Source of the DNA: Pocillopora damicornis
Lineage: Eukaryota
NCBI RefSeq assembly: GCF_003704095.1
Contig: NW_020843631.1
Coordinates: forward strand, 186,001-250,000
Length of the DNA stretch: 64,000 nucleotides
Direction: 5' to 3'
Part shown: piece after piece, positions 12,369-64,000 of the stretch
How positions within the stretch are numbered: the stretch's first letter is position 1
Layout of the letters: every line of letters starts with the position of its first letter
Program-made: the position numbers and the translations under genes
Notes under the pieces: generated by a model
What the model saw: only the letters and a program-made list of their open reading frames with translations
Told to the model about the DNA's origin: nothing
Database searches by the model: none

Positions 12369-14942
12369 ATGTCGCTGGAAGCAAGTGCTGAAGATGTGAA
12401 TTCTCCACTTATCCCAGATGATAACAGAAGCCCTTCAGCTTCCACTGAGTACAGGGCTAACTCACTGGTTAATAATCGTCAGCTGGGACGTCGCCAAAAG
12501 TTCTTCGTCACCAGCTGCATTCTTGTCACAGAGCTATGTGAATGTTTGACCTTTTATGGATTGACAGCTAACTTGCTGTTATTTGCTAGCAATGAATTAG
12601 ATCTTAATTCACCCTGGCCCTCCACTATTAATTATTTGTTTCATGGTTAGTAGGAAGTCTTCACATGTACATCTGAATAAACTGTCCAAATAAAATTAAC
12701 TGCCGGTAAAAGCATAAGTTCNNNNNNNNNNNNNNNNNNNNNNNNNNNNNNNNNNNNNNNNNNNNNNNNNNNNNNNNNNNNNNNNNNNNNNNNNNNNNNN
12801 NNNNNNNNNNNNNNNNNNNNNATTTTGTGTTGGCTCTGGTAATGATAGCATTTGGGACAGGGGGAATCAAAGCCAATGTGTCGCCTTTTGGGGCAGATCA
12901 GGTTCAACAGGATGGTCCCAGAGCTGTCCAGGCTTTCTTTAACTGGTTTTACTGGTGTATCAATGTTGGATCGTTGATAGCTTTCACTGTTGTTGTATGG
13001 GTTCAACAGAATAATTTTTTCTACGGCTATGCAATCACTGCTGGGACCATGTTCCTTACAGTTCTCGCATTTCTTACGGGTCGCAACAAGTACTTAACAA
13101 AGCCACCTGGAGGTAGCCAGCTGACCGAAATTGCAAAAATATTGTGCGAGGCGAGGCGAAATCGCAAACAGAACACTGGTGGTTGGCTTGATGGAGCAAA
13201 GAGCGCGTTTGGAGGAAAATTTACACATGCTCAGGTTGAAGATGTCAAGTCATCTCTGAGAGTCATCGCAGTGTTCTTTCTCTTTATTCTTTACTGGACA
13301 ATTTCTTCTCAGGTAAGTTTTGGTGTTAGGTTTCTTTTAATTCCATGTGGGTTGGGTGTGGCAAGGGTCTATTACCGCTCCCAGTTACACCCCAAAAACC
13401 TCACCGAGGAATCTTTAGCCAGTACCTACTGTCTTGTTCTGTCCCTTCCCTTCCCTATATCAACTTGCTTTAAGAAGCTCTCTTAAGCTTTTAACTGCCA
13501 AAAGTGACCAACATGTTCTTGACAAAGACTAGCAGTTCAGTGGTCAAAACGTCCCTTATCAATACACGATTGATTAGCTTGTATCTTACGTTGTGAGACA
13601 AACAATTAAGCATCCGTTTATTATATACTTGACCAAAAAGAACAACATAATTTTCTATAGCATTTTAAGGATTGGATGACACTCTCCATTAGACAGTTGC
13701 AATCATTGTTTAGACAAATTTTGAAAACACTATTAATATTGTTTTATTAAACTTCATCATTGTTTTGCTTGAACTTTTTAATTTCAACTTAAATACACAC
13801 ATATATTTTATCGCCTTTCCCAGATGCAGACTACGTTCCTTATCCAGGGTACCTTCATGAATCTGAAATCGTCAAACTTCACTGTGCCGGCAGCTTCCTT
13901 GTCCATTTTTTGTACTGTTGCAGTTCTTACACTTATTCCTCTCATGGATAATGTTTTGTATCCTTTTGTGCGCTACCTTGGCTTTAACTTCACTCCTCTG
14001 CGACGTATTGGTGTGGGTATGTTGCTGGCAGCAGCTTCCGTGGCAGTAGCAGGAGTGATTGAAATACAACGAAGGAATGAATGGCTTCATGGTGGCATTT
14101 GTCGGCAAAAAGTTTTGGATGATTACCGCAGTGCTTCATGTTTAAGTATATTTTGGCAAGTCCCCCAGTTTGTATTGATTGGTGTCAGTGAAGTTTTTAC
14201 AAGTGTCACAGGTATGCAGAAGCCACACAGGGAAGCAAACAGTCTTTAAAAAGTTTTAAAAGAATTTCTTTTAACCAAGGTTGTACTAAACTCCTCAATT
14301 CCTATGATGTGATAAGAAATATTTCTCACCTTGACCAATACGAGATCTTCCTTTAATTAATTTGGAGCATATTGTTGGCATTTTATTCAAATCATGACTA
14401 AATGTAATTATTATGTTCCTGTTAAATCTTGGTAGTAATCTATTGTGATCCTGGGGTGGGAGGAGGGTGTCGACGATTCAAACTGATCGATGCCTAAAAC
14501 CCAAGCCAATTCACAATCATCAGCTTACAAACTGGAGTAAACCCTTTTCTTCATAAAGTATTATAGTATTAATGATAAGTGTGGTTGACTGCAGTTGTAC
14601 TTGTTGATTGCTTGTAAGAAGAGTGTGTTAAATGATCCTTAAATCAGCNNNNNNNNNNNNNNNNNNNNNNNNNNNNNNNNNNNNNNNNNNNNNNNNNNNN
14701 NNNNNNNNNNNNNNNNNNNNNNNNNNNNNNNNNNNNNNNNNNNNNNNNATGTTGCAAACCTTCTTGTCGTCATCGTCAAGGTAGCTAGCAATGGTGATTG
14801 GTATCCAGTGGACGACCCAAACCATGGTCACTTTGAGTACTTCTTCTTTCTGTTGGCTGGGCTGATGATGCTAAATTTCCTGGTGTTCCTGTACGTTGCC
14901 TCCTCCTACAAATACAAAACTTCCTCTGGGAGGAATTTTTGA
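12369..14942 (+). CDS. SLC15A4: SLC15A4-like copy 2 (tandem duplicate, possibly decaying); exons 12369-12645, <12822-13312, 13824-14211, <14749-14942; parts of exons 2 and 4 lie in N gaps
   Basis: Colinear with copy 1 including introns and UTRs (about 12071-15730 versus 1-6240). ExxER reads ELCEC. TGA at 14940-14942 precedes the ancestral stop at 14988-14990. Confidence 0.82.
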
Positions 14943-17112: not shown

Positions 17113-20100
17113 ATGATGACTTTAGCTCATGCTTTACGCTCTCTTTTCCTTATCCTTACGACTGCAAATGGTAAGTTTGTAAAGTTTAAATAGGAGATGA
17201 ACTTCACGTTATGTTTATGTTATCTGAACTAAATGTCAGAATGGATGCCGCTGTTGGTGTTGCAATGTCAAATTTACCCGAGAAGATCAGGTAAAGAAGA
17301 GAAATTAAGACACAATGAATTGGCCGGACAGACTACACTCGCGATAATTGAGAAAGCAACCTGCGGCTAAATATAACACAGCCCTTTTGCCGACTAACAG
17401 AACTCTGTTCGAAAAACCGAATCTTGATTAAAAAGGTTCCGAGCAGGTTTGTTCAGTTGTATTGATCTATTTTTTTTTTACATTCATTGTATACTTAAGA
17501 AAAGGCACGTTGCAACGTATCCTGAAAGAGTTGGAATTCATGTAATCGTCTCCTGAAGAAATGTAGATTGATTTCGTTTACGGCTGGCGAGCTTTCGATT
17601 TCACTGACCTGCGCCAGGCTCATAACGTTCCACCTTCCACTTCACCTCACGAAAGTGTAATGCACACTTAATTCAGTTTTTTGATTAACTAATCTATTAT
17701 CCGAGTCGTATCGTTCATTTTCCTCATTTCGCAAGAACTCCTCGTCTCCTCAACACAACGTAATATAAAGAAAAATCAAATGGTTTCTAATCCTTTTTTT
17801 TAACCCCTAGGGATGACTGGCTTCTAATTTCTCCTCACAATGTCACCCTTGAGTCACCTACAAAGGGCATGAGACTAAAGAAAATATCGCCAATTTTAGA
17901 AGATCCTGATTATCAGTCAAATTCTCCTTGACAGTATCTTACGAAATGTAAAGAGAACAGTGTGGAGAATATGAACATACTTATGTTAGGGTGCAAAGGG
18001 TTAAACTGAAACAACGACGTGTGCACTCACCTTCGGCAACATGGTGATGAGGGTGTGGTTAGGAAGAGGATTTTGTTTTTCTCCGTAGGGGGTGCAATGT
18101 TTTATTTTTTTTACGCACCTTTGCACGCCTAATTTAGATAACTTACAGTCCTCGCAGATTGCCCTCATTCTTGTAATGGCCATTCTTAGGTTAAAATCGA
18201 CTTTCAATAAATAGAATTGAAATCAGCACCGTCTTTAGTGCTCGAATGACTTAAAGAACCAAGAGAGATCGAGTTGTTAACCAGTGAAGAATTAAAGAGA
18301 GTTGAGGGTGGAAGAGAGAGATCTCGCAGGGTCAGGGAGTGACCTTTTTTTCCTGAAATAGTCCCGGGATTAAGGAAGGTTTTCTTCGGTGCCCAACGGT
18401 TCTGAAAAAGAGGCTAACTTTTTTTTTTTCTCCGTGTTCATTATTTCCTAGCTTTCAGTAATGCATAAAACAACTGGTACATTTCCAAAGCCTCTGGCAC
18501 TCAAACTACTGACTGCAATTCTCCTCAGTCCCCTTGCCAGTCGCTGGCTGATGTGATACCTTTGGTAGCCTGGGACGACAGGTTTTACCTCGATGGTACA
18601 AAAACCGAACATAATCCGTACACATGCGTGCACATGACGTCACAATATCGTGGTTTTCCTGTTTATTTTAATATGAGCCTGTCTGTTGTTGGACAAAATT
18701 CTCCGGCGCACATATTCTGTCCAGACGGTATCTTTTTCATTGGAAGATACACGGAGGTGAGTTTTTACGATGTGAAATTTTACTCGACGCCGATCTCGTT
18801 CTATCATGGCTCTGTTGTCATCAAGAGAAGCGTTTTCACCAGCGTCTCCGTGGCGGGTATGGCAGAAAACCAAACGAGTAACGCGAGCGATGGAGTTTTG
18901 AACTTCCATTCGACGGTAAATTTGACGATCTCAGATAGCGATTTTGGAAAGAACGCCACAATCAGGGTGAATGGATCAGACGTCATTGACTTAACGAACT
19001 GTAAGTTCTATGACAATAAAGCAGGGGCGGCAACACTTTTCCCTCCCCGGTACGCTCGAGTCATTGTAGACAGCTGTGTTTTTATGGACAACTGGGGCAG
19101 TCTTAAAGTCATCGGAAGTTCAATTACTTCGCTTTACGTGAAAAATACTATAATTTACAGATACTCTAGAGAAATAGCTCTAATTCTAGAACTTTCTTCG
19201 TCCTCTGTAGCTACGATAGAGAACATAACCGTTGAAAAAAGTGCAATATTAAGTGATGATAGTTTTAGGGCCTCTGCGGTTTATATCTCACTGTACAAAG
19301 GACATAACAACCTCCAGATTCTCGACTCAGCTTTTAAACACAACAGCAACATCGAGAGTGGAGTTGGCGCGATAATCATAGAGAATGAGGGCGACTTAAT
19401 GACATCCAGAGGCTGTAAGCATAACAAGTACGACACAGGCGCTAAAGGATTTCCTACATACCACTACACTAATATAATCGAATTTAGGAACTGTGTTTTT
19501 CAAGAAAATAGTGGACAGTACACAGGAGCGGTGATGCTATCTAACGGCCTGACGATTTTTCGGAACTGTACTTTTGTAAATAATTTTGCGTTCATTCGAG
19601 CGGGTCACCTAACTATTGCTGCCGGATCGGGCGCTGTGGAAATTTACAACAGCACGTTCCAACAAACAAGGGGAGCTCCGCGTGACGTACCCTCGATGCT
19701 AAAGTCTAATAACTCTTTTATTTACAGCAGCAGTTCTGGAATGTTGATGATCGAAGATACGATTTTGAATTTCACCCATGTAAGTGAAGGGACGCTTCTA
19801 GAGATCGTAGATGGAGGAAATGTGACCATTGACTACAATTCTTCCATGCTGTGCCCCGTAGGAAGTAAGCTATGGTTTGATAACTACACCCATGGCATTG
19901 TTGCAACTTTTCCAGAAAATTTTTTGGACAGAAGATGCCCTCTTAATGTAAAGATCTACAGCGTTTACTGTGAACGTTGCCCTGTAGGGTTCTACAGTCT
20001 ACAGAGGGGGAAAGCATATGGCACCCGAGTCCTCGAAGGTTTCCAATGTCTTCTCTGTCCCTTTGGAGGAAACTGCACTGATAACATTGTGAATCATGAT

Positions 20101-21858
20101 CATTTTTGGGGCTCCGTGGTAAAAGAAAACCCTCCGACTCTACAGTTCTACATGTGCCCTCTAAATTATTGCGAGGCACCAAAGGATACCAAGTCATCGA
20201 TCTACGATGGTTGTCATGGAAACCGCTCAGGTGTATTGTGTGGAGCATGCGCAGAGGGATATAGCGAGGATTTGTTCTCTACTACATGCAGGCGTGACGA
20301 AGATTGTAACGATTACTGGCTTTGGCCAGTGATTTTAATCTACTGTGTTGCTGTTGCCATTTTTTTCATAACGGATCCTCCAATCGTACCCTTCCTGGTG
20401 AAGCACATATTTTGGTTTAGACGGGCGACAAGCGAAGAAGGAAAGTCCGCGACCAACGAAAATTCCAATGAACGGCAGAACAGTAGAAAAGGTGCGGGGA
20501 ATTCTAGGTCTGGGCTTCTAGATGTCGTGTTTTACTTTTACCAGGCTGTAGGTCTTCTTATCTTTGGCACAACTGGGCAAACAGTAAAATCGGCTTCTTT
20601 AACTCCATTAGTCAAGGGAATTTTCAACTTTCGAACCCATTCTTCCTCGATCAGCCTTGGTTGTCCGTTCGCAGGACTTAGCGTCATCACTAAGGAGCTC
20701 TTTTACACATTTGTGGTATTTACTTTGCTGTTTTGCGTTTTTATAATTTATGGTGCTCGACAAATCTGGGCGAAAGCGCGTAGTTCCCGTCAACCCTCGT
20801 TCGCTCCGCATCTCTCCGCGGCGACCCACATCGCACTACTCGGATACACGTCCCTAGCAACCAGTGCGTTTAAGCTTCTGACAATCGTGATGATGAGGTC
20901 TGGAAACGATATTGAAATTCGCTCGTTCTTTGATGGCAACATCATATTTTTCACGTGGTGGCAATGCGTTTTACTTGTTTACGTCATCATTTACGTCATA
21001 CCATTTGTTGGCCTCCTCTATTGGGGTGCCAGCTGGCTAAGCGAGAAACGAATTACAGCGCGTGAGTTTTTTATGGCATGCGTCCTTCCACTGCCGTTCT
21101 TGTTATACTGGGCAATATGGAAGAACAAGCGCGCTTGTCTTTACCGTGAAAGATCTCAACAGACTGAGGAGCGTTTGGCTGTGATGAATGTTCTTCACGG
21201 GCCTTTCCGACCGCCAGACGCTAACCAAAAAGGTACGCTTTACTGGGAGAGCGTCTTGATCGCACGAAGACTGATCCTTATCATTATATTCGCGTTTATC
21301 AACATGGCAAGCCTTCGGCTTCTTTTGTCCACAATTGTTTGCGTTGTCATTGCAATTCACCACGTTCTGTACCATCCCTACAAGGACAACAACGTGAACA
21401 TGTTAGAAACCGTGTCATTAGTGGTAATAATCGTTTTTGGTCTGTTTAACACTGTGCACGCCACCTTCATCTCAGCAGGGGTGCACCTCAGGGGCCCAAT
21501 CAAAACATATGTCAATATCCTTAACTGGATCCAGTCGATTATCGTACTGCTGCTGCCGCTGGCAGTAATCATCGCTGTCATTTTTGCGGTGCTTTCTCAA
21601 ATTGTTCGTGCTGGTTTCGCGGCGGGAAGGATTTCAAAACCATATTTTCTCCGAGGTAGGCTACGAAAGAACACTTCAGCGATCTCGAAACGAAAATCCT
21701 CTCGACTCTCCCATGAAGAGTCGCTTTTTGGTAATGCCGAAGTGGCTAAAGATAACGAAGTTGTGCGCGAACTGGTCGAGGGAAGTTCGCCCAGCCATGA
21801 AGATTGTATTTACCATGAAGAAGACTTGAAGTGCGACGAAGGGAAGCCAGAAGAATAA
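17113..21858 (+). CDS. Large surface/receptor-like protein: signal-peptide exon 17113-17170, then one large exon 18452-21858 encoding a pectin-lyase-like/Pmp-type beta-helix, a Cys-rich region and a multi-pass TM domain; in-frame TAA at 18466-18468
   Basis: 1101-aa ORF (18553-21858) with FxxN/GA repeats (FQENSGQYTGAV, FVNNFA), CERCPVGFYSL, CPFGGNC, CPLNYC, CHGNRSGVLCGACAEGYS, many hydrophobic helices and a YWESVLIARRL motif. Upstream exon MMTLAHALRSLFLILTTAN|gtaagt joins it in phase 1. Confidence 0.82.
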
Positions 21859-26700: not shown

Positions 26701-28549
26701 ATTTGTCTTAATTGCAAGAATCACTAACATTTACAGGCAGTCATCACAGCCAAAAATAAAGAAATGGAAAAAAATGAGGAAAGAAAAAATATTCAAACTT
26801 ACAGCTAGAGATCAGCAAGCACAACTGGATGATAATTTTGCAATAAAAGTTACACACAGAGCAAAGTCTGACCTTGACAAATTTTTTTTATCAATGTTTT
26901 GAAGATCAAATATAGTTGACCCTCTCCTTATTTACTCTTTTATCTCTCAGATCTTGAGAGTGACAGTCTCAAAATATTCCTGATCTGCTACACTTACCCA
27001 GTGAACTTTACATTTACATCTAGTCCTGTCTGTAATTTGTTCATGATTGCAATGGCATCATGCATGTTTTGTTCATAGTTTAGCTGGGCTCCTTCGGGTA
27101 AGCGCTGTTGAGGATTCAAAGGCACATTAGGATTTTAGGAGACAATGTATAGCTTGAACATTATCTTAAAAATTTGTTTTCCTAACCCTGTAACTCCTAC
27201 GAGTGAGCAAGACAGAATTTTTCCCAACAATATCAACAAATACAATATCAATCAGACAAGTAATGAGAATACATATAACTGTCGAAAAGGGGGTTTAATT
27301 ATTGGCTAATCCAATACCAAATTCTCCACACAAAAAGTGTAATAATTGTATGGCACACAATGAATAGAATAACTAGTGAGATCTTGGGAGAGAAAGAGTT
27401 ATTCAAAGAGGTTTTTAGCATTTTAACAGCAGTGTCCCTAGTTGACACTTTTCAAAGGGTTAGGTTAACAAATCACAATCTTAGTTCACTCTTTAGAATC
27501 CTATGTCACTCTGAGATGTGTGTTCAGAATGCAGCAACTGCAACTACTCTTGATATTCTGTCATTTGAGGTCAGTACTGTAAATCTACAAATTTGTGGCT
27601 GTGTATAGCTCAGAATGACAATGAAATTTTCTTGTCAACTTCCTTATACTATTAACCACACTTATTGTTGATAATAATTGCAAATTCATCTTCAAACCTT
27701 GGGTGCTTCTTCTAAGATGCAGTCTCCAATATACTCCATGAGCTGCCCTGATGTCACAAACTCTTGCTGTGGTGGAAGAGTGATTCTTCTCTGCAGAAGA
27801 AGCACATTAACAATTGCTAGAAGAGGACAGGGGCCATTTTCATTCTGTGTGATTATGGGCGTGTTAATACCTTTCCATTTTATCCACTTAATATGATATA
27901 TCGACTCCAAAGCCTGTTCCTCTTGAGTTTGTATTTTATCTCCAGTTTGAGCCTCACTCTGGGAACTCTCTGTCAACTCAGAACTCTGGTGTTCGGATGC
28001 GTTCGGATGGAGTTCTGAAGTTGAGTCATTCGTTGTTTCACTGATGTTCGAATGAACCGCACTTAAATCGTTTTCTGTTGGCAAATCGGCGCTCTTAGAG
28101 TCCTCGGTCTTAGAGTCTTCAGAAATCTCAGGAGTGCTGTTTTCGTGTCCTGATACCTGAAAGTTCTCCTGTGTCGTATCCGAGTCATGTTCCACTCCAA
28201 CAGGTCTTGGCAGTGTAATGTTCACATGTTTTTCCTCGCCTTGACTGCCTATTTCACCATCTTCAGTTGATGTTTCGCCCTGTTCGGTTGATTCTAAACG
28301 GTCACCTCCTTCATCTTGAGGCAACGAATTTTTTTCACCTAACCTTGCATCTTCGTCGTTTGTCGCTACGTTATTCACTTGAGGAGCGTCTCCATCGTCG
28401 AGCGTTTCTCCCGAGCTCTCGACAAATCCGGCAGAACTTTGCGTTTCGGTCTGATCATCTTCTGAGTTTTCCGCACCAAGAGTAAAGTCAGGGGATCTGC
28501 TTAAAAATTCATCAGGATTAGATGCAGTGTGCTCTGTTACATCGTCCAT
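23766..28549 (-). CDS. MINDY2: MINDY-1/2 family K48-specific deubiquitinase (FAM63); visible exons 28549-27698, 27104-26998, 26655-26462, [exon(s) missing in gap], 25097-24951, 24400-24226, 23786-23766
   Basis: YHIKWIKWKG...TPIITQNENGPCPLLAI (catalytic Cys); LQTGLDVNVKFTGVKDFEFTPECIVFDLL..LYHGWLIDPQ; SYNQLVEKII; two MIU motifs (YLVALSLQEEQ, DLQLAIQLQQEE); C-terminal DRCVIL*. All GT-AG. Confidence 0.92.
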
Positions 28550-29465: not shown

Positions 29466-32400
29466 ATGGCTCGCTATCACTGCGCAAAAATTTGGCGAGC
29501 TGAGTTTGTTTACTGTTTACTTTTGTTTCTCGCGAAAGAAGCTCGAACCGTACCGAACCACGGCAGTCAGACCTTTCTTGGCTATGAATACTGGAATAAT
29601 CGCTATTCCATGGGCTATACGGATTGGAATGGTTTCTGGAACAATGGCAACAGCGGGAGAACTATGTATAATCGTCAAAACTCCGAGACGAGCGGACAAT
29701 CTTGCGGAGGTTGTTCCTGCAACAACCAAGAACGTACAGCCACTTGTACTGGCCCGAGCGTGTAAGTATCTTGTTTCAAGTTTGATATTACTCTTTCTTG
29801 TTTTTTTATCTTTATTGAGTTTAATACCTGCATTGTTTTGTTTGAAGTTCTTTTATTGCCTCTTCAACGGATTTTTATCAGCGCTATGTAAAAAACTTCG
29901 ATCCGATTGAAAAGAGCAACACAAACAAGAGGGAGAAATGTTTTATTTATTCGCACGATTTCGACAAAATGTTTTTTTTAGATGTTTCAGAATTACTACA
30001 TTTGTCTTTGAAGAGAATTAGAAGAGGTGGGTGGTGTTCAATTGATATCTGGGGCGAGAAAAATTTTACAACTTATGCCAAACGATCTCTTGATCTGAAT
30101 CTGTAAAGATTTGAAACGCTGTGACTAAATGTTCGGTTCTGAGAGTTTTTTTTTAAGTTCTTAAGAGTATCTGATGTCTAATAAGAATTGTCAAAAAATT
30201 CCAAAAACTGTTTTGGTTTTTAGTGGACGAATTTCCCGTACTTGTGTAATCATCTTTAGATCGCAAGGTATTACTTATATAACTTTTCCAACATATCAAG
30301 TTTATGTAATGCACAAGCTCGGAACATTCGTCCTGTTAAACATAGACCTATACTCTAGCATTAGTAAACATATTCTCTATACTGTCTACTTATATTACCT
30401 AAGGTGCTGAAAAAGTTAATATGTTTAATAATCAAAATTTACTTTGGTTGGTGATCATTCCCTTTATTTCCTTGATCGTAATGAGGATTTATAATGGTAA
30501 TTGGAATGAGTGGAGTGCAATTTGGGCTGAAATCATACGCGTGATTTCAAAATTGAACGAGAGCGCAGCGCGAGTTCAATTTGAAATCACAAGTATAATT
30601 TCAGACCAAAATTGCACAACACAAAGTTCAATTACCGCTTTATTACATCCATTTTGAAATCGCCCAAATACAGGACTTCAAATATTTTGTTACTACAATA
30701 CTGAGCCAGTTTCAAATTAAATTCATCCATTTTTTGGGAGGAAAAAAATAAGAGTTTTGGAAACAAAAGTTGTAAAATTTGCCACATGACACTTCATATC
30801 TTTCATCTTCCTGCAATTTGATCGGTTACTTTAAACAAGCCTTGAAGTCTGATTGGTTGTTTTGTTTTTAGTGTAGCCTCCTCATAAAGCAAAAAATGGT
30901 GCAATTTGTGAATAAATTGCACCGATTAGAGCCAATCAGATTACAGGGACCACCAGTGATTTCAAAATGGGTGTAATAAAGGGTGAAATTGTGCAGATAA
31001 ATTACTTGCTAGTCTTTCCCTTTAGGGGTCAGAGGATTAAAAACGATTGTAATCGTTGGATCACTTGGCATTTCTAGACAAACATTGAATGTCTCTCATT
31101 AGGTTTTGGGAGGAATGGGGTAAATATTTCTGACATTCAGACATGGTCATACCCAGCATTCAGAAATATTAACCAAATTCCCCCCAAAAACTTCTAGCTT
31201 ACTGAGTGAGGATGTACAGTGTTCTTTGGCTTGCCTCCCAGTCAGAGTTCACAGGGTTCCTGAGATTTTGTTGTAACAGGCTCCCAGTGAAACTGCAATT
31301 TAGTGTTCATGGGCATTGCTGTCGCAGTCCTTTAAGGGTAGAAAGGGTTCCTGCTCATGCTTGAATTTTACGAGAGCTTGTTGGAGTGGCTCTAACTCTT
31401 ATAATAATGATGATTTGGTCTGTGGTGACAGGTCATGGTGACCACAAATCAATGAAAGACTGAAGTTTTTTGGATAATGAACTTTGTGTGGGCTACATTA
31501 GCTAATACTGGTATTTAGCTGATGGTTGCATGTAGTCCATAGGAGATTAACACTTGACCAATGTTTGAAAAGTATTTGGTCGATCTATAGCAGGCAACTA
31601 GATATTTATCAAATAGCAGATTGATAACAGTTGTATCACTTTAGGTATCAACTGTCAGGATATGAGGGCATCAAGATACTTAATGTCTATCTGACAAGAG
31701 GCAATTTTCTACAATGATCAACCTACTATCAATTTACTTTTAGCCCCCAAATTGAAAAACTATCAGTGGACATATCAACTGACTGATAAATTGCCTGACT
31801 GTGGCTGTCTATCTGTTTGTGCCCCTGTTAAACCCTGGTGTCATCATTGACCTGGGTCGGGGACTGGGTTCTGTTTTCACAACCAGGAATAAAATTTGCT
31901 TTTGTTGATGGAGCAGAGATCTGTGTGCCTTACAAGAACTTTAGGTGGAAAGACTTTTGTCAGAGGGGCTTGCTCATCTGATAATATTAAGCCCCTTCAT
32001 AAATTAAACTAATGCCTCTGATGTGAGTGAGAGCTTAGAAGGGCTCTTTTCTCAAAAATCAGTGGGTATCTAACTCCAGAAACCTTTGAAAAATTCATAA
32101 CAAAAAGTGATACAATCAAGTTTCTCACTGAGAATTTTAAGTTAGATGCATCTGGTAATCAGCCTCTCTAGTGGTGACATCTGGCCCTTCATGAGAATCA
32201 GTAACATCTCTTCTTAATATGCTGCTTTATCCATCAGTTACTTTGTTATTCAAACTGAACTGTCACATTTTATATCATACTAAGCATAGCAAAGGCTTGA
32301 TTTCTTAGCTTTGGAGCCATTGGCCAGCACCTAAGTGAGCTCTCTGTCTGCATAAGGCATATTTTCTGCAGTGATATATTTTCTGCTGTGCATTAATTTA

Positions 32401-35400
32401 TATCTGAGAAATGCATATCCCTGGTTTTTGAAAAGGTTATGGAGTGCTTATTTTGGTAGTAAGCCACTGGTTGTTAACAACTTACAATATTATCATAGTG
32501 GATTGTACAAATGTTTGATTTTAAAATCACATAATTATGTGATTTCAGAGCAAATTACACCACAATCAGTCCAATCATCCTAAGCTTATTAATTATATCA
32601 AGGTACATGTAATATCTATAAATTAATATTCACCAAATGATTGATAGGTTCTAATACCTGTTGATTGATAGGTTCTGAGTTTTGTTTTAAAGTGATTACA
32701 TCATGTTTTGTACCTTTTTGTCATCAGGAACATCAGGAATAGGGCAGTACAAAATTTAAATCCAGAGGATCTTAATGTTGGAATTACAGAAATGTAAGTG
32801 TGCTACTATATAGAGTTAGATGAGACTCTTTAGTCAGGAAAAATTTTGTACATGGTAAGAGGTGGCCAAAATATGAGAGAACTCTGATTATTGTAAATTG
32901 ACTCAAATTTTTTGTGGGCAGAGAAATGTTTAAATATTATGTTTCCTTTGTATATTGAATTATGGGCATCAATTTTTAAAGGGACAATATCTTAAAATAA
33001 CTGAGTCATAAAAATTGATGTGGCCAATGTGAAGATGGAGAAAGAATCCACCACATGGAGAGTGATGGTCAAATAAAATAGACATTGTGAAGGGTAAATT
33101 TAACCTGTCTTCATTAAAAAGTGTGTTTCTACTCTTTGCAGTAAAATTTTCAAATCTGGCTTAGAGTATGTAAATGCCAAGGCTTTCCACAATCTGACAG
33201 GCCTAAAAGAACTGTAAGTAACCACAATTTTCATGGATTCTTTTCAATTTAGTTGCACCCATTTTAAAAAAAAGTTGGTGCTTTAAGTTTCTGGGCAAGA
33301 TATCTTATCAGCATATCATTAGGTAGTTATTAAACTGACTTTATTGATAAAACACACTAAAACCACATTTCTCAGAATCACTGGTATTAGCAGAGTTGAA
33401 CATTAGAATTGTTCAAGGACTAATCTATGACAAGAGAGTGGTATGTTATCTTCAGTTGGTAATTTGAGCAATCTTAACAACATTGTTCATTATTCAATAC
33501 ACAAATAATCAGATAGAGGATCAATACCAGTATCTAGGCAACTGCCCACCTACCCCTTCCCTAACCCAACATTAGCCTTAACTTGTTGTCAATTGACTGT
33601 TGTTGAGTTAGGGGAGGGGTTGGTGGGCAGTTGCCCAGATATTGATATTGATCCCAGATAGACAACAGCAGGAATGAACAAATGCACCTATTTCTCAACC
33701 CCACCTCCCCACACCACCCCCTCCCCAGAGAAAAAATGATTAATATTAACAATAAAACAAACTAATCAACAAAATTTACTCACTGACTGACTTGGACCTT
33801 AAAAGTAGAAAAAAAAAAAGAATGTGAGAAACCCCCAGATCACCAATGTGTGCAACTTAGAATTCTTTCAGCTAGGACTCTCATCAGCACATGTACATGA
33901 CTATTTAATTGCTCCTCAGGAATTTGGCACAGAATGGACTAACTGACTTTCCAGATATATCCAAGAATTCTCTCCTGGAAGATCTGTAAGTCACTTTTAG
34001 AGTGTCATCATCTGCATTAAGCACTTGACAACAGCCTCCTTCTGATGACTGAAAAAAAAGGCCAGTCAAATTTTGTTATAATCGTGATTGTCAGTTTCTG
34101 TTCTCATGGTAAACAATGATAGCTTAGAATACTTGTGGATATGTTTGTTTTCATTCTTGAATTGATCTATACTTGTGGTTAAAACCGCCAGTATTTATGG
34201 AGATCAATGGCTTAGAGAACTTTTGACATTTTATGTGGTTCTATTCCTTTCAAGTGCTTCTCTTTTTCTTTTGTATGTATAGCAGAACATTTTCTTATCT
34301 TTAACCAAAACAAGAGAATGTAATGTTTCTTTTACTATCCTTTTGTTTCTACTCCTTTAATAGTGATTTGTATGCAAATAAAATTCAGTTGTTCAGCCAC
34401 AACTTCACCAGTCTGCCAAAGGCCTTGAAGAGAATGTAAGTACTGGTAGGGTTAACAAGGATTCATGATTAGTGACAGAAGTTGGAAGAACAAAGATACC
34501 AGGATGATAAATAAGGCATAGTCATGGTTACATGTGACATACAGAGGTTGCAACCTGAAGGTAGAAGCTACCTGCTCGCTTTTCAAACTTTGTTTCGGAC
34601 TCATCTTAGATGGGGCTGCAATTTTTTCTTGAATAAAACTGTGAGTTATAATCAAGTTCACTTTCATTGGTTTATCTTTTGTTTTTCTTTTCAGTATTAT
34701 GATTGACAATGAGATAGACTGGATTCCCAATGAATGGTTCAATTTGCCAAACCTTGAATACCTGTAAGTATATCTATTAGTAAAATAATTGCTTTCATTT
34801 CACAAGACGTACCAATGTCTAAGAACCATCTTCCAATAAATTTTTAAAGGCTGGGTGATGTTTGTTTGTCATCCTGCAATTTACAATTCATTGCATTTGG
34901 TTATCTACCAGCTATACTTAGCTATGATGATTCTCATAGTTGATAATGCTTCATGTTTAATGGCATTTTACAGCATATAATATGTATGAAAATAAATCTA
35001 ACCACATGTTATATCATATTTGCAAGCAATTGATGATTAATTTGTATTTATATTGCACTCATGACAGTGCGTTAAGCAAGAACAGGTTGAAAAAGTTTCC
35101 TTCAGCTTCCTTCATAAACTGCCGCTCACTGCTGTACCTGTGAGTATTATTTGTTTGGAATACTAAAAGTTTAAATGTCTTCTTCTCATTGATTTTTTTA
35201 AGTTACCTTAATGTTCATGTGTATTTTTGTTGGCAGGTCAGTTGATCAGAATGAAATTGGCAGTCTTACGGTTCCAAACATGCAACCCTTCTTTGGAAAT
35301 GACTCTGCACTTGTTCATCTGTAGGTTTCTTAAAGCCAGTCTTTTATAAGGCTTACCATGCAATTTAAGTTCTCTTAAAACAGCAATAAATTCTGGATCT

Positions 35401-60300: not shown

Positions 60301-63300
60301 CAGCGAACCAGAGAGAATGTACGTACAGTGTAGCCTTGATACTGAAGTCTTTTATACAGACACGGCAGACTAGTTTTAAACTCTCTTTTAAGGCTTCTAC
60401 TGGGATCGCTACAAAGTCGAAGCTGCCTCACTATAATTTTTAGGTGTTAAACTTCGTTAAGGTATAGAAAAAAGGGAAATCTTTCTTGGAAATTAATTTT
60501 ACTGCAAGGCAAAGTTAAGAAATTCGGCTTGTCATTAGGTATGGTCACATACCTTGTTGACGTAGCGTTTTATCGAAGATTGTAAGTTAAGTAGAGAGGT
60601 TTTCTTCAACAATCTTACTCCAAATGTGTTCCTTGCGGTGCCTCCAAATAGCTTTTATATATTTTCTTGTACCATTGTTGAAGTTGGCAATTCTGACAAA
60701 CCTTATTACAGTTTAAGTGGTATGAAGCGACTATTCCTTTTGATGGGATCAACCCCAGATCTCTCCCTACCCCCCCTCCCCCCCTTCTCTCTCCCCCCTT
60801 CCTCTCCACCCCCGTCATTTCGTCACTTCGACTCCACGGTTAGAAGACACATTGTAACGGCTTTCGCATAACCTGTCAAATGATATTGTGTTAATTTTGG
60901 AAATTAAGTTGTAAAGATTTCAATTTTTCTTTTCATTAATTTTCTTTTTTTTTCTTCTCTTCTCTTTGTATGTTTTTCTTTTTCTATTCCTAAATCATTG
61001 CCTTATATAACAGTCCTCACATCAATTCCACGAAGTTTTATGTCAATAATGGTACCGAGGTGGTGTGGAGCAATAAGACTGTGAAGTGGACCTACAAGTA
61101 CTTGATATTTGCTGTGGATGGAGGTTCGCCAAAACGCGGTGATAGTATCCCTTTGAATATCACATTTGATGCTACTTGCGAAGCGACCGGAGCTGTGGTA
61201 GCTGATCCAGTCACCGGTGAGGTGTTCTTCAGAGCACCTGGGCTCACAGGATCTAAATACCGTAAGTACCTCACAATAAGTGTTATTATTAACAATTGTT
61301 CTATCAATGCGCGCCAGATATTGGATGCTAAATGGCTTCAATTATATTTTATTCAAAAAGTGCAAATTGAATTTTTTTTCCATTACTTTTGTCCTAATTT
61401 AGATTCCAAATACCCAAAATCTACCACAAACATTGCGAATAAACGCTCTGTTTAACCTGCCAAAAAACGGCTGTAATTGTGATCCTTGTTATATGAGCTC
61501 AAATGGCGCGGCCTGTAGACTGTTCAAAAACCAGGAATGACTATGTTTCACGGTCAACTGTTTGCCGTTATATGAATATGTGGCTCAGTGGCCTATCTTG
61601 CCAATGATCTCTATGTAGCAGATTTAGTAGCATACAGCATAATTAGCGTGACCTTAAACGAAAGTTAGCCAAAGTTAAGGGTTAGTTGTTCAAACCTAAA
61701 CCATATTTAGCTTCTTTACAAAAACTACACAGCCACCGCATTTTCAGCAGACAGCGGAATGGAAATATGTTTTTATTAAATTTTGCTGTTACGCGGCAAT
61801 TATGACATCTGTATATAAATATATTTTTTTTTCTTTTATATTCAACTTTTAGCTTTAAACTCCACGGATAAGCCGAGATGTCGCGGCTGCACTCATGGGT
61901 ATTTCTGTGTTGGAGATGGAACTGAAGAAAGATGTGGACTCGCTTCACCAACAGAATTCTCCTTTGGTTCCGCAGCGACTTGTTCACCTTGTCCCGAGGG
62001 ATGGGTAAGTGGGTCGAGTGGTGTAGTGTACTTATCTCTGGGGATGAGTGGGAGGGTTTTGGAGTGGGGTCTTTATCCTGTTTCGACCAAAACCTTTGAT
62101 TTTTCAAAAGCTTATTTAATTCTAAAAGCACCCACGATTTTCTCAAAAACCCGATAAGAATACCAGGAGGAACGTTAAGTTGAAAGGTGAAGTGTCGCAA
62201 TACTTCGTTGCTCGATAATCGAGAGCAACAAATATTAAGGTAATTTGGTTTTATCAACTGAGTTGGTAACGTAAATTGGCCACCGTAAAGAGTTTCAAAG
62301 CTGACGTTTCAAACGTTGGCCCTTCGTCAGATCGAAGCACCATATATTACATGAATTGTGCGTCCTTTTTTTCAGCTTTGTGTGAATGGTACCGCACTCC
62401 CCTGTCCAGAAAGTACACATGTCAAGTGCAATTCGACGGTGGGTATTCTATGAAGTACTGTTTTTACCATTGCGAAGTCAATGGATGGCATCAAACAAAC
62501 TAACCAGGGTCAAAATTGCTTGCGAACATCGAATGCGGTGAATATTTGGTTGAACTTCTTGTGGTGAGCTCAGTAGTGGATTGTTCATCGTGCTAAACTC
62601 AGAACTGAGCTCTAGCCTAACCGGTTTCGTTGCATCATGTTCTTGAACAAGATACTTTACTTTCAAATAATGTCTGTGTGACAGGAGTAAACAAAAGATA
62701 ACTGTTATGGAAACCAGCAAAAATTCAACCCAATCCTGGCGAGCGAGTCTTTATACGCCATTTGCTTCATTGCGATGAACCTCGTCTCAATTCAGCGGCT
62801 ACTACTTAGTCTGGTCTACGGATTTTAGTTTTTAATTAAATAAAAATCGTTTCTCTTTTCTTGGTAGTGGTGCCCCGAAAATTGCTTTGATTGTGAACCT
62901 GGCACAGTTTGCTTTGAGGGAAGGAAACAAGACTGTACACCAGGACGATACAGTGATGGAAAAGGTTGGTTCGATCTCGTGGTGGGAGTTTTGGAAGAGA
63001 GCCCACAATCATGACATTTTTCAAGTCTCCAAAAATTGCTTGGTAGATTTTGCAAACGTCTCCCTTTCAAGAAGAAAATGATCAAGACCGTTCATTTTTT
63101 GTCAAAAACTGATGAAAACGTCCAAGTCTTTAAATCTGAATACGGCTAGAATTGAGAGGCTCAGTTCGTCTCGTATCGTCTGCGCGTCCAATTGATTCAT
63201 GTGATGTATTATTATGGGAAATTTTAAACGATGGGAATGTCGGCGCGAAAATGTTAGCGAACTAACAGTAGCAGCTTGCACAGATAGCTTACACACTACC

Positions 63301-63521
63301 GGAACGAATTCCCTTTCTCTCTTCAGGATTTCCATGCACGCTTTGCCCTCCCGGTAGCTTCAACAACGCGACTCGTGCACAAACCTGTGAGTGTTGCGAG
63401 GATGGTTACAGCAGCACATATATGAAGACCAGTTGTCGGCCATGTCCTGCCAACGAGTGGGCAAAACATGGAAGCTTCCCAAACTGTTCCATGTGTCAGA
63501 CTTGTTTTAATTCTGAGGACT
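29466..63521 (+). CDS. Giant secreted/cell-surface mosaic protein: SP, LRRNT, ~36 LRR, LRRCT, FN3, fibro-slime/PA14, 2 cadherin-like repeats, Cys-rich repeats; 3'-partial, 54 exons, about 1899 aa in window
   Basis: Hand-spliced GT-AG exons, all in phase with no stops: 29466-29761, 32728-32793, 33142-33213, 33920-33985, 34364-34435, 34695-34763, 35068-35139, 35237-35320, 36137-36208, 36799-36870, 37411-37494, 37962-38045, 38452-38535, 39183-39263, 39907-39960, 40395-40466, 40598-40675, 41158-41235, 41950-42021, 42751-42816, 43337-43405, 44028-44099, 44214-44285, 44816-44887, 45265-45336, 45792-45890, 46428-46502, 46826-46894, 47569-47640, 47886-47960, 48632-48706, 49205-49273, 49596-49664, 49934-50005, 50831-50902, 51384-51455, 52049-52114, 52344-52415, 52718-52896, 53037-53170, 53961-54213, 54705-54771, 55233-55556, 55923-56092, 56363-56463, 57472-57636, 58135-58354, 58727-58872, 60143-60318, 61014-61261, 61853-62004, 62376-62438, 62868-62964, 63327-63521. 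Confidence 0.88.
30490..30980. mobile_element. Palindromic non-autonomous repeat in intron 1 of the LRR gene
   Basis: Inverted arms GGTAATTG...TGCAATTTGGGCTGAAAT...TGATTTCAAA / TTTGAAATCA...ATTTCAGACCAAAATTGCA...CAATTACC. A second pair TTTATTACATCCATTTTGAAATC / GATTTCAAAATGGGTGTAATAAA. Confidence 0.7.
33518..33654. mobile_element. 137-bp hairpin MITE
   Basis: GGATCAATACCAGTATCTAGGCAACTGCCCACCTACCCCTTCCCTAAC pairs with GTTAGGGGAGGGGTTGGTGGGCAGTTGCCCAGATATTGATATTGATCC. Confidence 0.8.
43613..43928. repeat. Tandem repeat, about 104 bp x 3
   Basis: TTTTAGGTCTGTATGGTTTATGTAGATAGACAGGGATGTATGTGGCTCG..ATCACTGATGTGCTTT occurs three times. Confidence 0.92.
48262..48372. repeat. (ATA)n microsatellite
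   Basis: Pure ATA run at about 48301-48345 with degenerate flanks. Confidence 0.95.
53670..53830 (+). mobile_element. Decayed tRNA-derived SINE-like fragment; related relics near 62570-62780 (+) and 25400-25535 (-)
   Basis: B-box-like GGTGTGAGTCCTGGCCGGGTCATTGT followed by GTGCCTCTCT. The relic at 62570-62780 shows TGTTCTTGAACAAGATACTTTAC. Family assignment is from memory of anthozoan SINEs. Confidence 0.45.
54705..57560 (+). other. Fibro-slime (PA14-superfamily) domain of the mosaic gene, spread over 5 exons
   Basis: LDITYYDF...DSFSNWFRS...FRHYNDKFFPVDGRGWG...RNYGFTAAIRTAFNFSGEEMLAFSGGEELWVFVDKTLVVQI...YRLDVFIAERFRCNSRI matches my recollection of the fibro-slime pattern FFP.D..G.G...N(F/Y).FT...F...G.E.F.F.GDDD.WVF....L...Y.LD.F.AER. 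Confidence 0.8.
59095..59190. repeat. (ATG/ATT/ATA)n low-complexity microsatellite
   Basis: GATGATTATGATGATTATGATGATTATGATAATA-type run. Confidence 0.8.
59383..60109. mobile_element. Non-autonomous hAT-like DNA transposon (727 bp) with 6-bp TSD
   Basis: TIRs CAGGGTTTTCATT / AATAAAAACCCTG (12 of 13 match), flanked by direct repeat GTTCTG at 59377-59382 and 60110-60115. Confidence 0.8.
61853..63521 (+). other. Cys-rich (ephrin-receptor-like/GCC2-GCC3-type) repeats of the mosaic gene
   Basis: CRGCTHGYFC, CSPCPEGWLC, CFDCEPGTVC, CTPGRYS, CTLCPPGSFNNATRAQTCECCEDGYSS, CRPCPANEW. Confidence 0.78.
62248..62336 (-). ncRNA. Short interspersed repeat carrying a minimal hammerhead-ribozyme-like motif (62301-62330); related copies near 56715-56900 (+) and 44608-44690 (+)
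   Basis: Minus strand reads CTGACGA-AGGGC-CAAC-GTTT-GAAA-CGTC-AG: CUGAnGA and GAAA cores with palindromic ACGU stem III. The downstream tail ACGGTGGCCAATTTACGTTA..AACTCAGTT is shared with the 56.8 kb copy. Confidence 0.5.
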
Positions 63522-64000
63522 GTGAGTGTGACTCTTTGTTTGTTAGTTCGCCGGGCTGTTTTGATATTTCTTGATTAATTACGAGATGTCACGGACTTAA
63601 AGCGGTATATCGCGGAGCCAAAGTTATGCACGACTCAGTGCAAACTACAGTGTGCAGGAGCATTCTTCGTTAAAATGCGATTTCGAGCTTTGACCTGTGG
63701 CGAACAAGACCTGTACACAGTGTTGGCGTATACAGCTGTATAATCGAAAAAAGAAACAAAAACCAAAAAAGGGTTATGATATCTTTTGAGTCACTAACTC
63801 GTTTCATCCCAGAAAAGTGACCGTGAGCTAGCATCTTTTACTCTTCTAAAAAGCAGGTTCGCCTAGTTTCTGCGATGCCTTTGGTTATATTTGTTATTCT
63901 CGTTAAATCTGTTCCATTGATCTCCAAATTTCGCCTTTCGCCTGTGTTCTATTCATAATATTGCCTTTACTCTTGGTCACAGTTTGTATCTTTGCTTTTT

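What the first reader, a model, noticed from the sequence alone, without database searches (positions are those of the whole stretch)
29466..63521. Hidden giant mosaic protein: LRR solenoid + FN3 + fibro-slime/PA14 + cadherin + Cys-rich repeats
Seen: 54 short exons, mostly invisible to the ORF track, splice in frame into about 1,900 aa with a signal peptide, and the gene runs past the window. Known: LRR arrays, PA14-type carbohydrate-binding folds and cadherin repeats usually occur in separate animal families (Slit/TLR/LRIG, cadherins). I know of no characterised protein with this order of domains. Inference: a large extracellular recognition or adhesion molecule combining a protein-binding solenoid with a possible glycan-binding module on a cadherin/Cys-rich stalk. 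It is a candidate for microbe/symbiont recognition, allorecognition or matrix function.
Basis: partly seen in the sequence, partly recalled or inferred. Interest (0 to 1): 0.85.

Follow-up and report, generated by a model that had tools for sequence, protein, structure and literature searches.

The report
Coral mega-thrombospondin gene, N-terminal two-thirds
The hidden 54-exon gene is real and expressed, but it is the front two-thirds of a coral mega-thrombospondin, a giant extracellular-matrix protein family described in 2019, not a new architecture.

Summary
On the + strand, 54 GT-AG exons (29466-63521) join in frame into about 1,899 aa, and the gene runs on past the window.

I read 30 kb downstream in the same contig. 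There are 23 more exons: EGF-like repeats, thrombospondin type 3 repeats, the thrombospondin C-terminal domain (Pfam, above threshold), a ConA/LamG-like domain and a short tail. The stop lies 13.2 kb beyond the window. The whole model has 77 exons and 2,799 aa, with no internal stop.

RNA contigs from four coral transcriptome studies splice the window's last exon to the EGF and type 3 exons. The cDNA-cloned Nematostella "Mega-thrombospondin" aligns in order along nearly the whole gene. A Stylophora protein does the same at about 55-100% identity per exon.

The assembly gap sits in intron 8. Orthologue residues are contiguous across it.

Domain calls:
- LRR, cadherin, Cys-rich and PA14/fibro-slime hold.
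- FN3 has only lead-level support.

One side observation may be new. The C-terminal tail has a polybasic site followed by an H-x-E-L end, conserved across phyla. The 2019 paper called this tail non-conserved.

The parts
29466..29761 (+). Exon 1: start codon, signal-peptide-like N-terminus, conserved N-terminal region and an LRRNT-like Cys cluster (model aa 1-99)
   Evidence: Open frame starting at an ATG. Hydrophobic core at residues 12-22. Aligns to residues 8-85 of Nematostella mega-TSP and to residues 4-95 and 13-93 of coral orthologues. No Pfam hit at exon level.
32728..52415 (+). Exons 2-38: 37 consecutive one-LRR exons of 54-99 nt, all phase 2 at both ends (model aa 99-1003)
   Evidence: Splice-site and frame scan. 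The alignment of the 37 exon translations shows the classic LRR consensus. A profile built from them hits LRRTM, LGR4/5 and variable lymphocyte receptors in PDB with E down to 6e-44. Collinear with the LRR regions of orthologues.
35984..35993 (.). Assembly gap (N) inside intron 8; not coding
   Evidence: It lies between exons 35237-35320 and 36137-36208. Orthologue residues are contiguous across this junction.
52718..52896 (+). Exon 39: LRR C-terminal cap (LRRCT-like four-Cys motif)
   Evidence: Read directly from the sequence. 86% identical to the Stylophora orthologue and 58% to the Nematostella one. No Pfam hit at exon level.
53037..54213 (+). Exons 40-41: FN3-like beta-sandwich region (model aa 1063-1192)
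   Evidence: No Pfam hit on the exons or in cnidarian orthologues. Language-model look-alikes of the homologous part of P0097 (residues 1-140, which map to these exons) are fn3 clusters with score 0.93. This is lead-level support only.
54705..57636 (+). Exons 42-46: PA14 / fibro-slime-like domain (model aa 1192-1467)
   Evidence: TIGR02148 Fibro_Slime matches exon 44 at E 2.6e-8, below the cut-off. The same hit appears in Nematostella, Oculina and Acanthaster mega-TSPs. An AlphaFold model of homologue P0042, which covers exons 43-46, has pLDDT 88. Its best structural matches are PA14 domains: Cea1A Z 9.8, RTX adhesin PA14 Z 8.5, Epa6A, Flo5A.
58135..61261 (+). Exons 47-50: cadherin-like repeats (model aa 1468-1731)
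   Evidence: Pfam Cadherin is sub-threshold on the exon frames: E 0.0015 at 58681-58929 and E 0.092 at 60041-60370. It reaches or exceeds the gathering score at the collinear positions of orthologues P0091, P0093 and P0096.
61853..63521 (+). Exons 51-54: Cys-rich ephrin-receptor-like / growth-factor-receptor-type repeats (model aa 1731-1900); exon 54 is the last exon in the window
   Evidence: Ephrin_rec_like at E 0.0018 on 63272-63571. It is above threshold at the equivalent position in bilaterian mega-TSPs. The exon 53-54 and 54-55 junctions are seen in RNA contigs.
63522..64000 (+). Start of intron 54. The gene continues for 23 more exons beyond the window (L004 and L005; window-equivalent 64105-77231): EGF-like, thrombospondin type 3 repeats, TSP_C, LamG/ConA-like, and a polybasic tail ending H-N-E-L
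   Evidence: GT..AG joint 63521 to 64105 in RNA contigs of four studies. Pfam cEGF, EGF_CA, EGF_3, TSP_3 (five exons) and TSP_C above the gathering score on downstream exons.

Best explanation
The stretch 29466-63521 is the first 54 of 77 exons of a mega-thrombospondin (mega-TSP) gene of a pocilloporid-type stony coral. It is the orthologue of Nematostella NvMT and Hydra HmMT.

The gene spans 47.8 kb and encodes a secreted glycoprotein of about 2,800 aa with no membrane anchor. Its parts, in order, are:
- a signal peptide;
- an LRRNT cap;
- about 37 LRRs, one per exon;
- an LRRCT cap;
- an FN3-like domain;
- a PA14/fibro-slime domain;
- cadherin-like repeats;
- ephrin-receptor-like Cys-rich repeats;
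- EGF-like domains;
- calcium-binding thrombospondin type 3 repeats;
- the thrombospondin L-lectin C-terminal domain;
- a second ConA/LamG-like domain;
- a short tail.

Shown here: the exon structure, the domains, transcription with splicing across the window's end, and collinear orthology.

Taken from the literature: mega-TSPs are extracellular-matrix proteins. They are expressed in endoderm and ectoderm of Nematostella and Hydra and are needed for Hydra head regeneration.

Inferred: the coral protein works as a matrix or matricellular scaffold. The long LRR solenoid would bind protein partners and the PA14 module possibly glycans. The thrombospondin C-terminal cassette would bind calcium and matrix or cell-surface ligands.
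For: Downstream domains:
- Exons beyond the window carry Pfam TSP_3 (five exon frames, 31-33 bits against a cut-off of 25) and TSP_C (78, 78 and 60 bits against 25.6), plus EGF families.

RNA evidence:
- RNA contigs from four independent coral (meta)transcriptome studies show seven GT..AG joints linking exon 54 to the EGF and TSP_3 exons. A loose end links exon 53 to exon 54. All eight agree with the model.

Homologues:
- Exon 43 alone finds proteins of 2,866-2,952 aa. Their Pfam architecture is LRR_8, Cadherin, Ephrin_rec_like (two of three), EGF, TSP_3, TSP_C, Laminin_G_3.
- A protein named Mega-thrombospondin from Nematostella (P0093, 2,805 aa) aligns in order from residue 8 to residue 2771, at 33-77% identity per piece.
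- Stylophora LOC111331710 (P0091) aligns in order from LRR exon 21 to the last exon, at about 55-100% identity per exon.

Gene model:
- 77 exons, 8,400 nt, 2,799 aa, all GT-AG, no internal stop, and no hydrophobic 19-residue segment that could span a membrane.

Family definition:
- It is given in PMC6526912, where cnidarian members are 2,802-2,844 aa.
Against: - Within the window only two junctions (53-54 and 54-55) are seen directly in RNA. The other 52 rest on splice signals, frame and orthologue collinearity.
- Cadherin, ephrin-receptor-like and fibro-slime hits on the window's own exons are below the curated thresholds, because the domains are split over short exons.
- The signal peptide was judged by eye and hydropathy, not by a dedicated predictor.
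- Function is carried over from Hydra and Nematostella. Nothing is known for this coral.
- A second mega-TSP paralogue exists in the genome, so roles may be divided between the two.
Confidence: 0.93

Rival explanations
1. Two or three adjacent genes have been read as one: an LRR protein, a PA14-cadherin protein and a thrombospondin-like protein.
For: Only the junctions from exon 53 onward were seen in RNA. Gene predictors often fuse or split repeat-rich genes. Several public orthologue models are N-terminally truncated, for example P0091 at 2,229 aa and P0100 at 2,089 aa.
Against: - No in-frame stop, no start signal and no long spacer at the supposed borders. The introns there are only 302 bp, 140 bp and 583 bp.
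- Intron phases match across all borders.
- The cDNA-cloned Nematostella protein (PMC6526912) and more than 25 full-length proteins from six phyla carry all parts in one chain, in the same order.
- RNA contigs of 3.5-4.0 kb end in exon 54 and extend upstream.
Confidence: 0.03
2. It is a previously unknown recognition receptor for symbionts, microbes or allorecognition, with a new domain order.
For: LRR arrays and PA14 lectin-like folds are used for recognition elsewhere. The architecture looks unusual if only the window is read.
Against: - The architecture is the published definition of mega-TSP.
- There is no transmembrane segment, GPI-type hydrophobic end or cytoplasmic signalling domain.
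- Orthologues are 1:1 collinear across Cnidaria and deuterostomes, unlike fast-evolving recognition families.
Confidence: 0.03
3. It is a decaying or silent paralogue of the functional mega-TSP gene.
For: A second mega-TSP locus exists on contig C3814.
Against: - 8,400 nt of intact reading frame with canonical splice sites at all 76 introns.
- Spliced transcripts in four studies.
- About 55-100% protein identity per exon to the Stylophora orthologue.
Confidence: 0.01

Closest known systems
Mega-thrombospondin (NvMT of Nematostella vectensis, MF962901 / A0A346ASF3; HmMT of Hydra; Shoemark et al. 2019, PMC6526912)
   Same: - Same order of parts along the whole chain: signal peptide, about 900 aa of LRRs, a central region with cadherin domains, EGF, type 3 repeats, TSP_C, a second ConA-like domain, a tail.
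- Same size: 2,799 aa against 2,802-2,844 aa in cnidarians.
- Collinear alignment at 33-77% identity per piece.
- Like the Hydra protein, it has a PA14 domain.
   Different: - It comes from a different species, and it is one of two paralogues in this genome.
- The paper lists PA14 only for Hydra, and FNIII and Cys-rich domains only for bilaterians or one sponge. Here the equivalent regions are present in a coral and, by sequence, in all mega-TSPs examined.
- The discoidin (F5/8 type C) domain of bilaterian members is absent, as in other cnidarians.
Canonical thrombospondins (TSP-1 to TSP-5/COMP)
   Same: The C-terminal signature cassette: EGF-like domains, calcium-binding type 3 repeats and the L-lectin-like TSP_C domain.
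   Different: - No N-terminal laminin-G domain, and no TSR or vWC domains.
- According to the paper, mega-TSPs have no coiled-coil oligomerisation domain and lack the DDD matrix-retention motif. I did not test either point on this gene.
- About 1,900 aa of LRR, PA14 and cadherin modules stand in their place, and an extra ConA-like domain follows TSP_C.
Extracellular LRR proteins with one LRR per exon (LGR4/5, LRRTM, Slit/LRIG type)
   Same: The typical 24-residue LRR consensus with LRRNT and LRRCT caps. The profile of the 37 exons matches LRRTM and LGR4/5 best.
   Different: These proteins have far fewer repeats, 7TM or single-pass anchors, and no thrombospondin cassette.
Fibro-slime / PA14 domain proteins (TIGR02148; yeast adhesins Cea1, Epa, Flo; RTX adhesin PA14)
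   Same: Sub-threshold TIGR02148 match. PA14 fold in a confident model of a homologue.
   Different: - Sequence similarity is too low for Pfam PA14.
- I did not check the calcium- and sugar-binding loop residues of the adhesin PA14 domains.
- Here the domain is embedded in a matrix protein, not at the tip of an adhesin.

Membership tests
Mega-thrombospondin (Shoemark et al. 2019) | N-terminal secretory signal peptide | tested here: inconclusive
   A basic n-region and a hydrophobic core at residues 12-22 (Kyte-Doolittle 2.2) follow the first ATG. The region aligns to orthologue N-termini. No dedicated signal-peptide predictor was available.
Mega-thrombospondin (Shoemark et al. 2019) | Extensive N-terminal region (about 1,000 aa) of tandem LRRs | tested here: met
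   37 LRR exons, model aa 99-1003. The exon profile matches solved LRR proteins with E down to 6e-44.
Mega-thrombospondin (Shoemark et al. 2019) | Central region with one or more cadherin domains | tested here: met
   Pfam Cadherin is sub-threshold on exon frames, at E 0.0015 and 0.092. It reaches or exceeds the gathering score in the collinear orthologues at the same exons.
Mega-thrombospondin (Shoemark et al. 2019) | Canonical thrombospondin C-terminal region (EGF-like domains, type 3 repeats, L-lectin TSP_C) in the same polypeptide | tested here: met
   cEGF, EGF_CA, EGF_3, TSP_3 (five exons) and TSP_C (three exons) are above the Pfam cut-offs downstream. RNA contigs splice window exon 54 to these exons.
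Mega-thrombospondin (Shoemark et al. 2019) | Second ConA-like globular domain after TSP_C, then a terminal tail | tested here: met
   Laminin_G_3 is weak on one exon, at E 0.028. It scores 65-70 bits in orthologues that are collinear over exons 71-76. The tail exon is at window-equivalent 77130-77231.
Mega-thrombospondin (Shoemark et al. 2019) | Very large size (typically more than 2,700 aa) and no coiled-coil domain | tested here: met
   The model has 2,799 aa. The coiled-coil part was not tested with a predictor.
Canonical thrombospondin (subgroup A/B) | N-terminal laminin-G-like domain and coiled-coil oligomerisation domain before the EGF repeats | tested here: not met
   The 1,900 aa before the EGF repeats are LRR, FN3-like, PA14, cadherin and Cys-rich modules.
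PA14 / fibro-slime domain | PA14 beta-barrel fold and family-profile match | tested here: inconclusive
   - TIGR02148 scores 34 bits on exon 44 and 33-44 bits in homologues, against a cut-off of 45.
- No Pfam PA14 hit.
- The fold was tested on a 34-40% identical homologue, not on the window protein. The model has pLDDT 88, and the top nine VIA matches are all PA14 domains at Z 6.6-9.8.
- Foldseek gave only weak lectin-like matches.
Fibronectin type III | fn3 profile match or fold | tested here: inconclusive
   No Pfam hit on the exons or on cnidarian orthologues. Only language-model look-alikes (fn3 clusters, score 0.93) for the homologous part of P0097.

The most novel reading that the evidence does not exclude
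Mega-TSPs, this coral gene included, carry a deeply conserved C-terminal propeptide that the defining paper described as non-conserved. It consists of a furin-type polybasic site (four to ten basic residues), then a variable spacer of roughly 6-17 residues, then a C-terminal H-x-E-L.

Here the ending is H-N-E-L, identical to the ER-retention signal of mammalian RAP. This would mean that export of a giant matrix protein is gated by KDEL-receptor retrieval until a proprotein convertase removes the tail. Alternatively, part of the pool may act inside the ER.

In addition, a PA14/fibro-slime lectin-like domain appears to be a general feature of mega-TSPs, not one limited to Hydra.
Probability: 0.35. 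Interest if true: 0.45.

Novelty: already known. Interest (0 to 1): 0.2.

Why it matters
As a discovery it matters little. The gene belongs to a family that was named, cloned and functionally probed in 2019, and close orthologues are already in public protein sets, mostly labelled "uncharacterized".

The follow-up is still useful in three ways:
- It shows that a window-limited reading can mistake the front part of a known giant protein for a new architecture.
- It gives an exon model checked junction by junction against orthologues where alignments allowed, with eight junctions seen in RNA (77 exons, 37 of them one LRR each). That model can correct truncated coral annotations.
- It turns up two small points the family paper did not report: a PA14/fibro-slime region conserved beyond Hydra, and a conserved polybasic-plus-HxEL tail that suggests controlled ER exit.

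Mega-TSP is required for Hydra head regeneration, so secretion control of the coral orthologue could bear on tissue repair. That link is speculation.

Tried and rejected
- Exon-level Pfam scans of the window gave almost nothing. There was no LRRNT, LRRCT, fn3 or PA14 hit, and only weak Cadherin and Ephrin_rec_like hits. The domains are split over short exons, so these blanks say little.
- The first AlphaFold run on the PA14-region homologue used 18 fragment sequences and failed (pLDDT 47). It worked only after 40 mostly full-length homologues were aligned.
- A profile of the PA14-region fragments found no PDB sequence.
- Foldseek against PDB gave only weak L-lectin-like matches with TM below 0.4. 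I do not rely on them.
- My first automatic splice model had two wrong junctions, with 34 and 7 extra residues at exons 48/49 and 71/72. An exon-by-exon check of orthologue residue continuity found them and they were corrected.
- A word search of earlier scan findings for thrombospondin returned nothing.
- The PAN, EGF and C-type lectin exons 3-5.6 kb past the stop codon were considered as part of the gene and rejected. Orthologues end at the H-x-E-L tail.
Full report
**What is in the window**

The window is G000:C266:186001-250000 of a 234-Mb animal assembly in 4,393 contigs, with about 37% G+C. The ORF list shows only scraps in 29-64 kb. Stop-to-stop frames on the + strand end again and again in LRR-like peptides.

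A scan for AG/GT-bounded exons found a long series of exons of 54-99 nt. Each has a length divisible by three, is phase 2 at both ends, and encodes one LRR. With orthologue-guided tblastn and a junction chooser I built a complete model. I then checked it exon by exon against the residue numbering of four orthologues.

The result inside the window is 54 exons, all GT-AG, 5,698 nt and 1,899 aa. The first base is 29466 and the last is 63521. Two junctions of my first automatic model were wrong and were corrected.

**The assembly gap**

The Ns at 35984-35993 lie in the intron between exon 8 (35237-35320) and exon 9 (36137-36208). Both exons are symmetric, so the frame cannot be disturbed. Nematostella mega-TSP residues run on without a break across this junction, and the Oculina and Acropora proteins align to both exons with no missing stretch. 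No coding sequence is expected in the gap. I did not try to fill it.

**Where the gene goes**

I fetched 30 kb downstream from the same contig. The open frames there read as EGF-like domains, thrombospondin type 3 repeats and a thrombospondin C-terminal domain. Pfam confirms this on single exons, above the curated cut-offs:
- cEGF, EGF_CA and EGF_3;
- TSP_3 on five exon frames;
- TSP_C on three (78, 78 and 60 bits against a cut-off of 25.6).

A LamG/ConA-like region and a short tail exon follow. The stop is at window-equivalent 77229-77231.

The full model has 77 exons, 8,400 nt and 2,799 aa over 47.8 kb. It has no internal stop and no segment hydrophobic enough to span a membrane. PAN, EGF and C-type lectin exons lie 3-5.6 kb past the stop codon. 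They belong to the next gene, because orthologues end at the tail.

**RNA evidence**

The RNA runs on record that hold this stretch are coral metatranscriptomes or marine and unspecified metagenome RNA libraries. I laid contigs of four runs from four studies on L004:150-6100 (window-equivalent 63150-69100). They show seven GT..AG joints:
- 63521 to 64105;
- 64235 to 64753;
- 64968 to 65506;
- 65655 to 66165;
- 66269 to 67207;
- 67314 to 68040;
- 68202 to 68695.

One 800-nt contig bridges the window's last exon to the EGF exons. One 1,157-nt contig bridges the EGF exons to the type 3 exons.

The loose end in front of exon 54 is the end of exon 53. All eight junctions equal the model.

Contigs of 3.5-4.0 kb end in exon 54 and extend upstream. 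This suggests, but does not prove, that they reach the LRR exons, because only the part on the laid stretch is shown. I had one reads call and spent it on the window-end junction, so the other in-window junctions rest on sequence and orthology.

**Homologues**

Exon 43 alone (window 55207-55563) finds proteins of 2,866-2,952 aa, besides fragments, among 1.84 billion representatives. Three of them have the following Pfam architecture:
- LRR_8;
- Cadherin;
- F5/8 type C;
- Ephrin_rec_like (two of the three);
- EGF;
- TSP_3;
- TSP_C;
- Laminin_G_3.

A second search from one of them lists "Mega-thrombospondin" of Nematostella (P0093, 2,805 aa). It also lists coral proteins from Stylophora, Oculina, Acropora, Montipora and Porites, most named "uncharacterized".

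P0093 aligns in order from its residue 8 (window 29517) to residue 2771 (window-equivalent 76775). Stylophora P0091 aligns from LRR exon 21 to the last exon at about 55-100% identity per exon. The cnidarian orthologues show LRR_8, Cadherin, EGF, TSP_3, TSP_C and Laminin_G_3.

The high identity to Stylophora points to a pocilloporid coral. From memory only, 234 Mb in 4,393 scaffolds fits the Pocillopora damicornis assembly.

**What is known**

Shoemark et al. 2019 (PMC6526912) define mega-TSPs by the following features:
- a signal peptide;
- about 1,000 aa of LRRs;
- a central region with one or more cadherin domains;
- the canonical thrombospondin C-terminal region;
- a second ConA-like domain;
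- a tail;
- a typical size above 2,700 aa, and no coiled coil.

The central region also holds PA14 in Hydra, FNIII, discoidin and growth-factor-receptor Cys-rich domains in bilaterians, and an ephrin-receptor-like domain in one sponge.

Cnidarian members are 2,802-2,844 aa. The Nematostella ORF was sequenced from cDNA. Expression is endodermal and ectodermal, and siRNA in Hydra blocks head regeneration.

The gene here meets every defining feature I could test.

**The individual domain calls**

- LRR: confirmed. The 37 exon translations give the consensus of the typical 24-residue repeat. Their profile hits LRRTM, LGR4/5, variable lymphocyte receptors and the Nogo receptor.
- PA14/fibro-slime: supported.
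  - TIGR02148 matches exon 44 at E 2.6e-8, below the cut-off.
  - It matches the same place in Nematostella, Oculina and Acanthaster mega-TSPs.
  - An AlphaFold model of a 337-aa homologue covering exons 43-46 reached pLDDT 88 with a 40-sequence alignment.
  - Its nine best matches among 48,161 PDB representatives are all PA14 domains, at Z 6.6-9.8.
  - The Z values are only moderately above background. The fold was tested on a homologue, not on the window protein.
- Cadherin and ephrin-receptor-like repeats: sub-threshold on exons, and at or above threshold in orthologues at the same positions.
- FN3: only lead-level support.

**How it most likely works**

Shown:
- It is a secreted-type, unanchored, Cys-rich protein (94 Cys) with 38 N-glycosylation sequons.
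- Its modules are those listed above.
- It is transcribed and spliced.

Taken from the literature: it is a matrix protein with a role in regeneration.

Inferred:
- The LRR solenoid and the PA14, cadherin and Cys-rich stalk provide binding surfaces for proteins and possibly glycans.
- The type 3 repeats bind calcium.

The paper argues that mega-TSPs lack the DDD motif that retains canonical TSPs in matrix. I did not test this on the coral gene.

**Side observation**

The last exon encodes a run of six arginines, a spacer of ten residues and a C-terminal H-N-E-L. The second mega-TSP paralogue of this genome, on contig C3814, ends in the same way with H-S-E-L.

Of 38 mega-TSP-like proteins in hand, 25 have both a polybasic run and a [HKR]-x-E-L end. 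These come from cnidarians, echinoderms, hemichordates and amphioxus. Most of the lophotrochozoan models stop at or just before the polybasic run. A 2,827-aa hit, P0104, of unrecorded taxon and the same length as Hydra HmMT, ends R-D-E-L.

H-N-E-L is the ER-retention signal of mammalian RAP, and H-T-E-L is its insect variant (PMC8239462). The family paper calls the tail non-conserved and does not mention KDEL or furin. It is the only paper in the library that names mega-TSP.

I read this as a possible removable ER-retrieval propeptide. That is inference from sequence only.

The joined protein model was used only inside scripts, to count length, frame and stops. It was not sent to any search or fold tool. 

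Noticed in passing
L005:4130-4231 (window-equivalent 77130-77231); paralogue at L007:3926-4045: The last exon of the gene encodes a six-arginine run, a short spacer and a C-terminal H-N-E-L. That ending is the ER-retention signal of mammalian RAP. The polybasic-plus-HxEL tail is present in 25 of 38 mega-TSP-like proteins from four phyla, yet the family paper calls the tail non-conserved.
   Followed up: partly
G000:C3814:35028-35345 and 48277-49854 (L007 covers 49000-58999): A second mega-TSP paralogue sits on another contig. Its PA14 exon is 69% identical, and the TSP_C exons, LamG-like exons and H-S-E-L tail lie on the same strand. Three further TSP_C loci, on C788 (two) and C464, are probably canonical or sushi-type thrombospondins.
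   Followed up: partly
window 18553-21858 (+): An intronless 1,101-aa open frame in a stretch of higher G+C (0.43-0.45). It is Cys-rich with several hydrophobic segments in its second half and has no Pfam family at E 0.001. What it is remains unexplained.
   Followed up: partly
window 1788-5538 and 12827-14249 (+): Two tandem copies of a POT/PTR2 (SLC15-type) peptide transporter gene, with assembly gaps between and around them.
   Followed up: partly
window 27692-28549 (-): The first coding exon of a MINDY-type deubiquitinase lies head to head with the mega-TSP start, about 900 bp apart. The two genes probably share a bidirectional promoter region.
   Followed up: partly
L005:7460-9754 (window-equivalent 80460-82754): PAN, EGF and C-type lectin exons on the + strand, 3-5.6 kb past the mega-TSP stop codon. 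This is probably a separate secreted lectin gene.
   Followed up: partly
window 62237-62336 (intron 51): A roughly 100-bp element with more than 50 copies across the genome at 80-94% identity. Copies often occur as adjacent inverted pairs, which suggests a MITE-like repeat.
   Followed up: no
window 54705-57636 and homologues P0008, P0011, P0093, P0096: The PA14/fibro-slime region is conserved at the same relative position in cnidarian, annelid and echinoderm mega-TSPs. The family paper records PA14 only for Hydra.
   Followed up: partly
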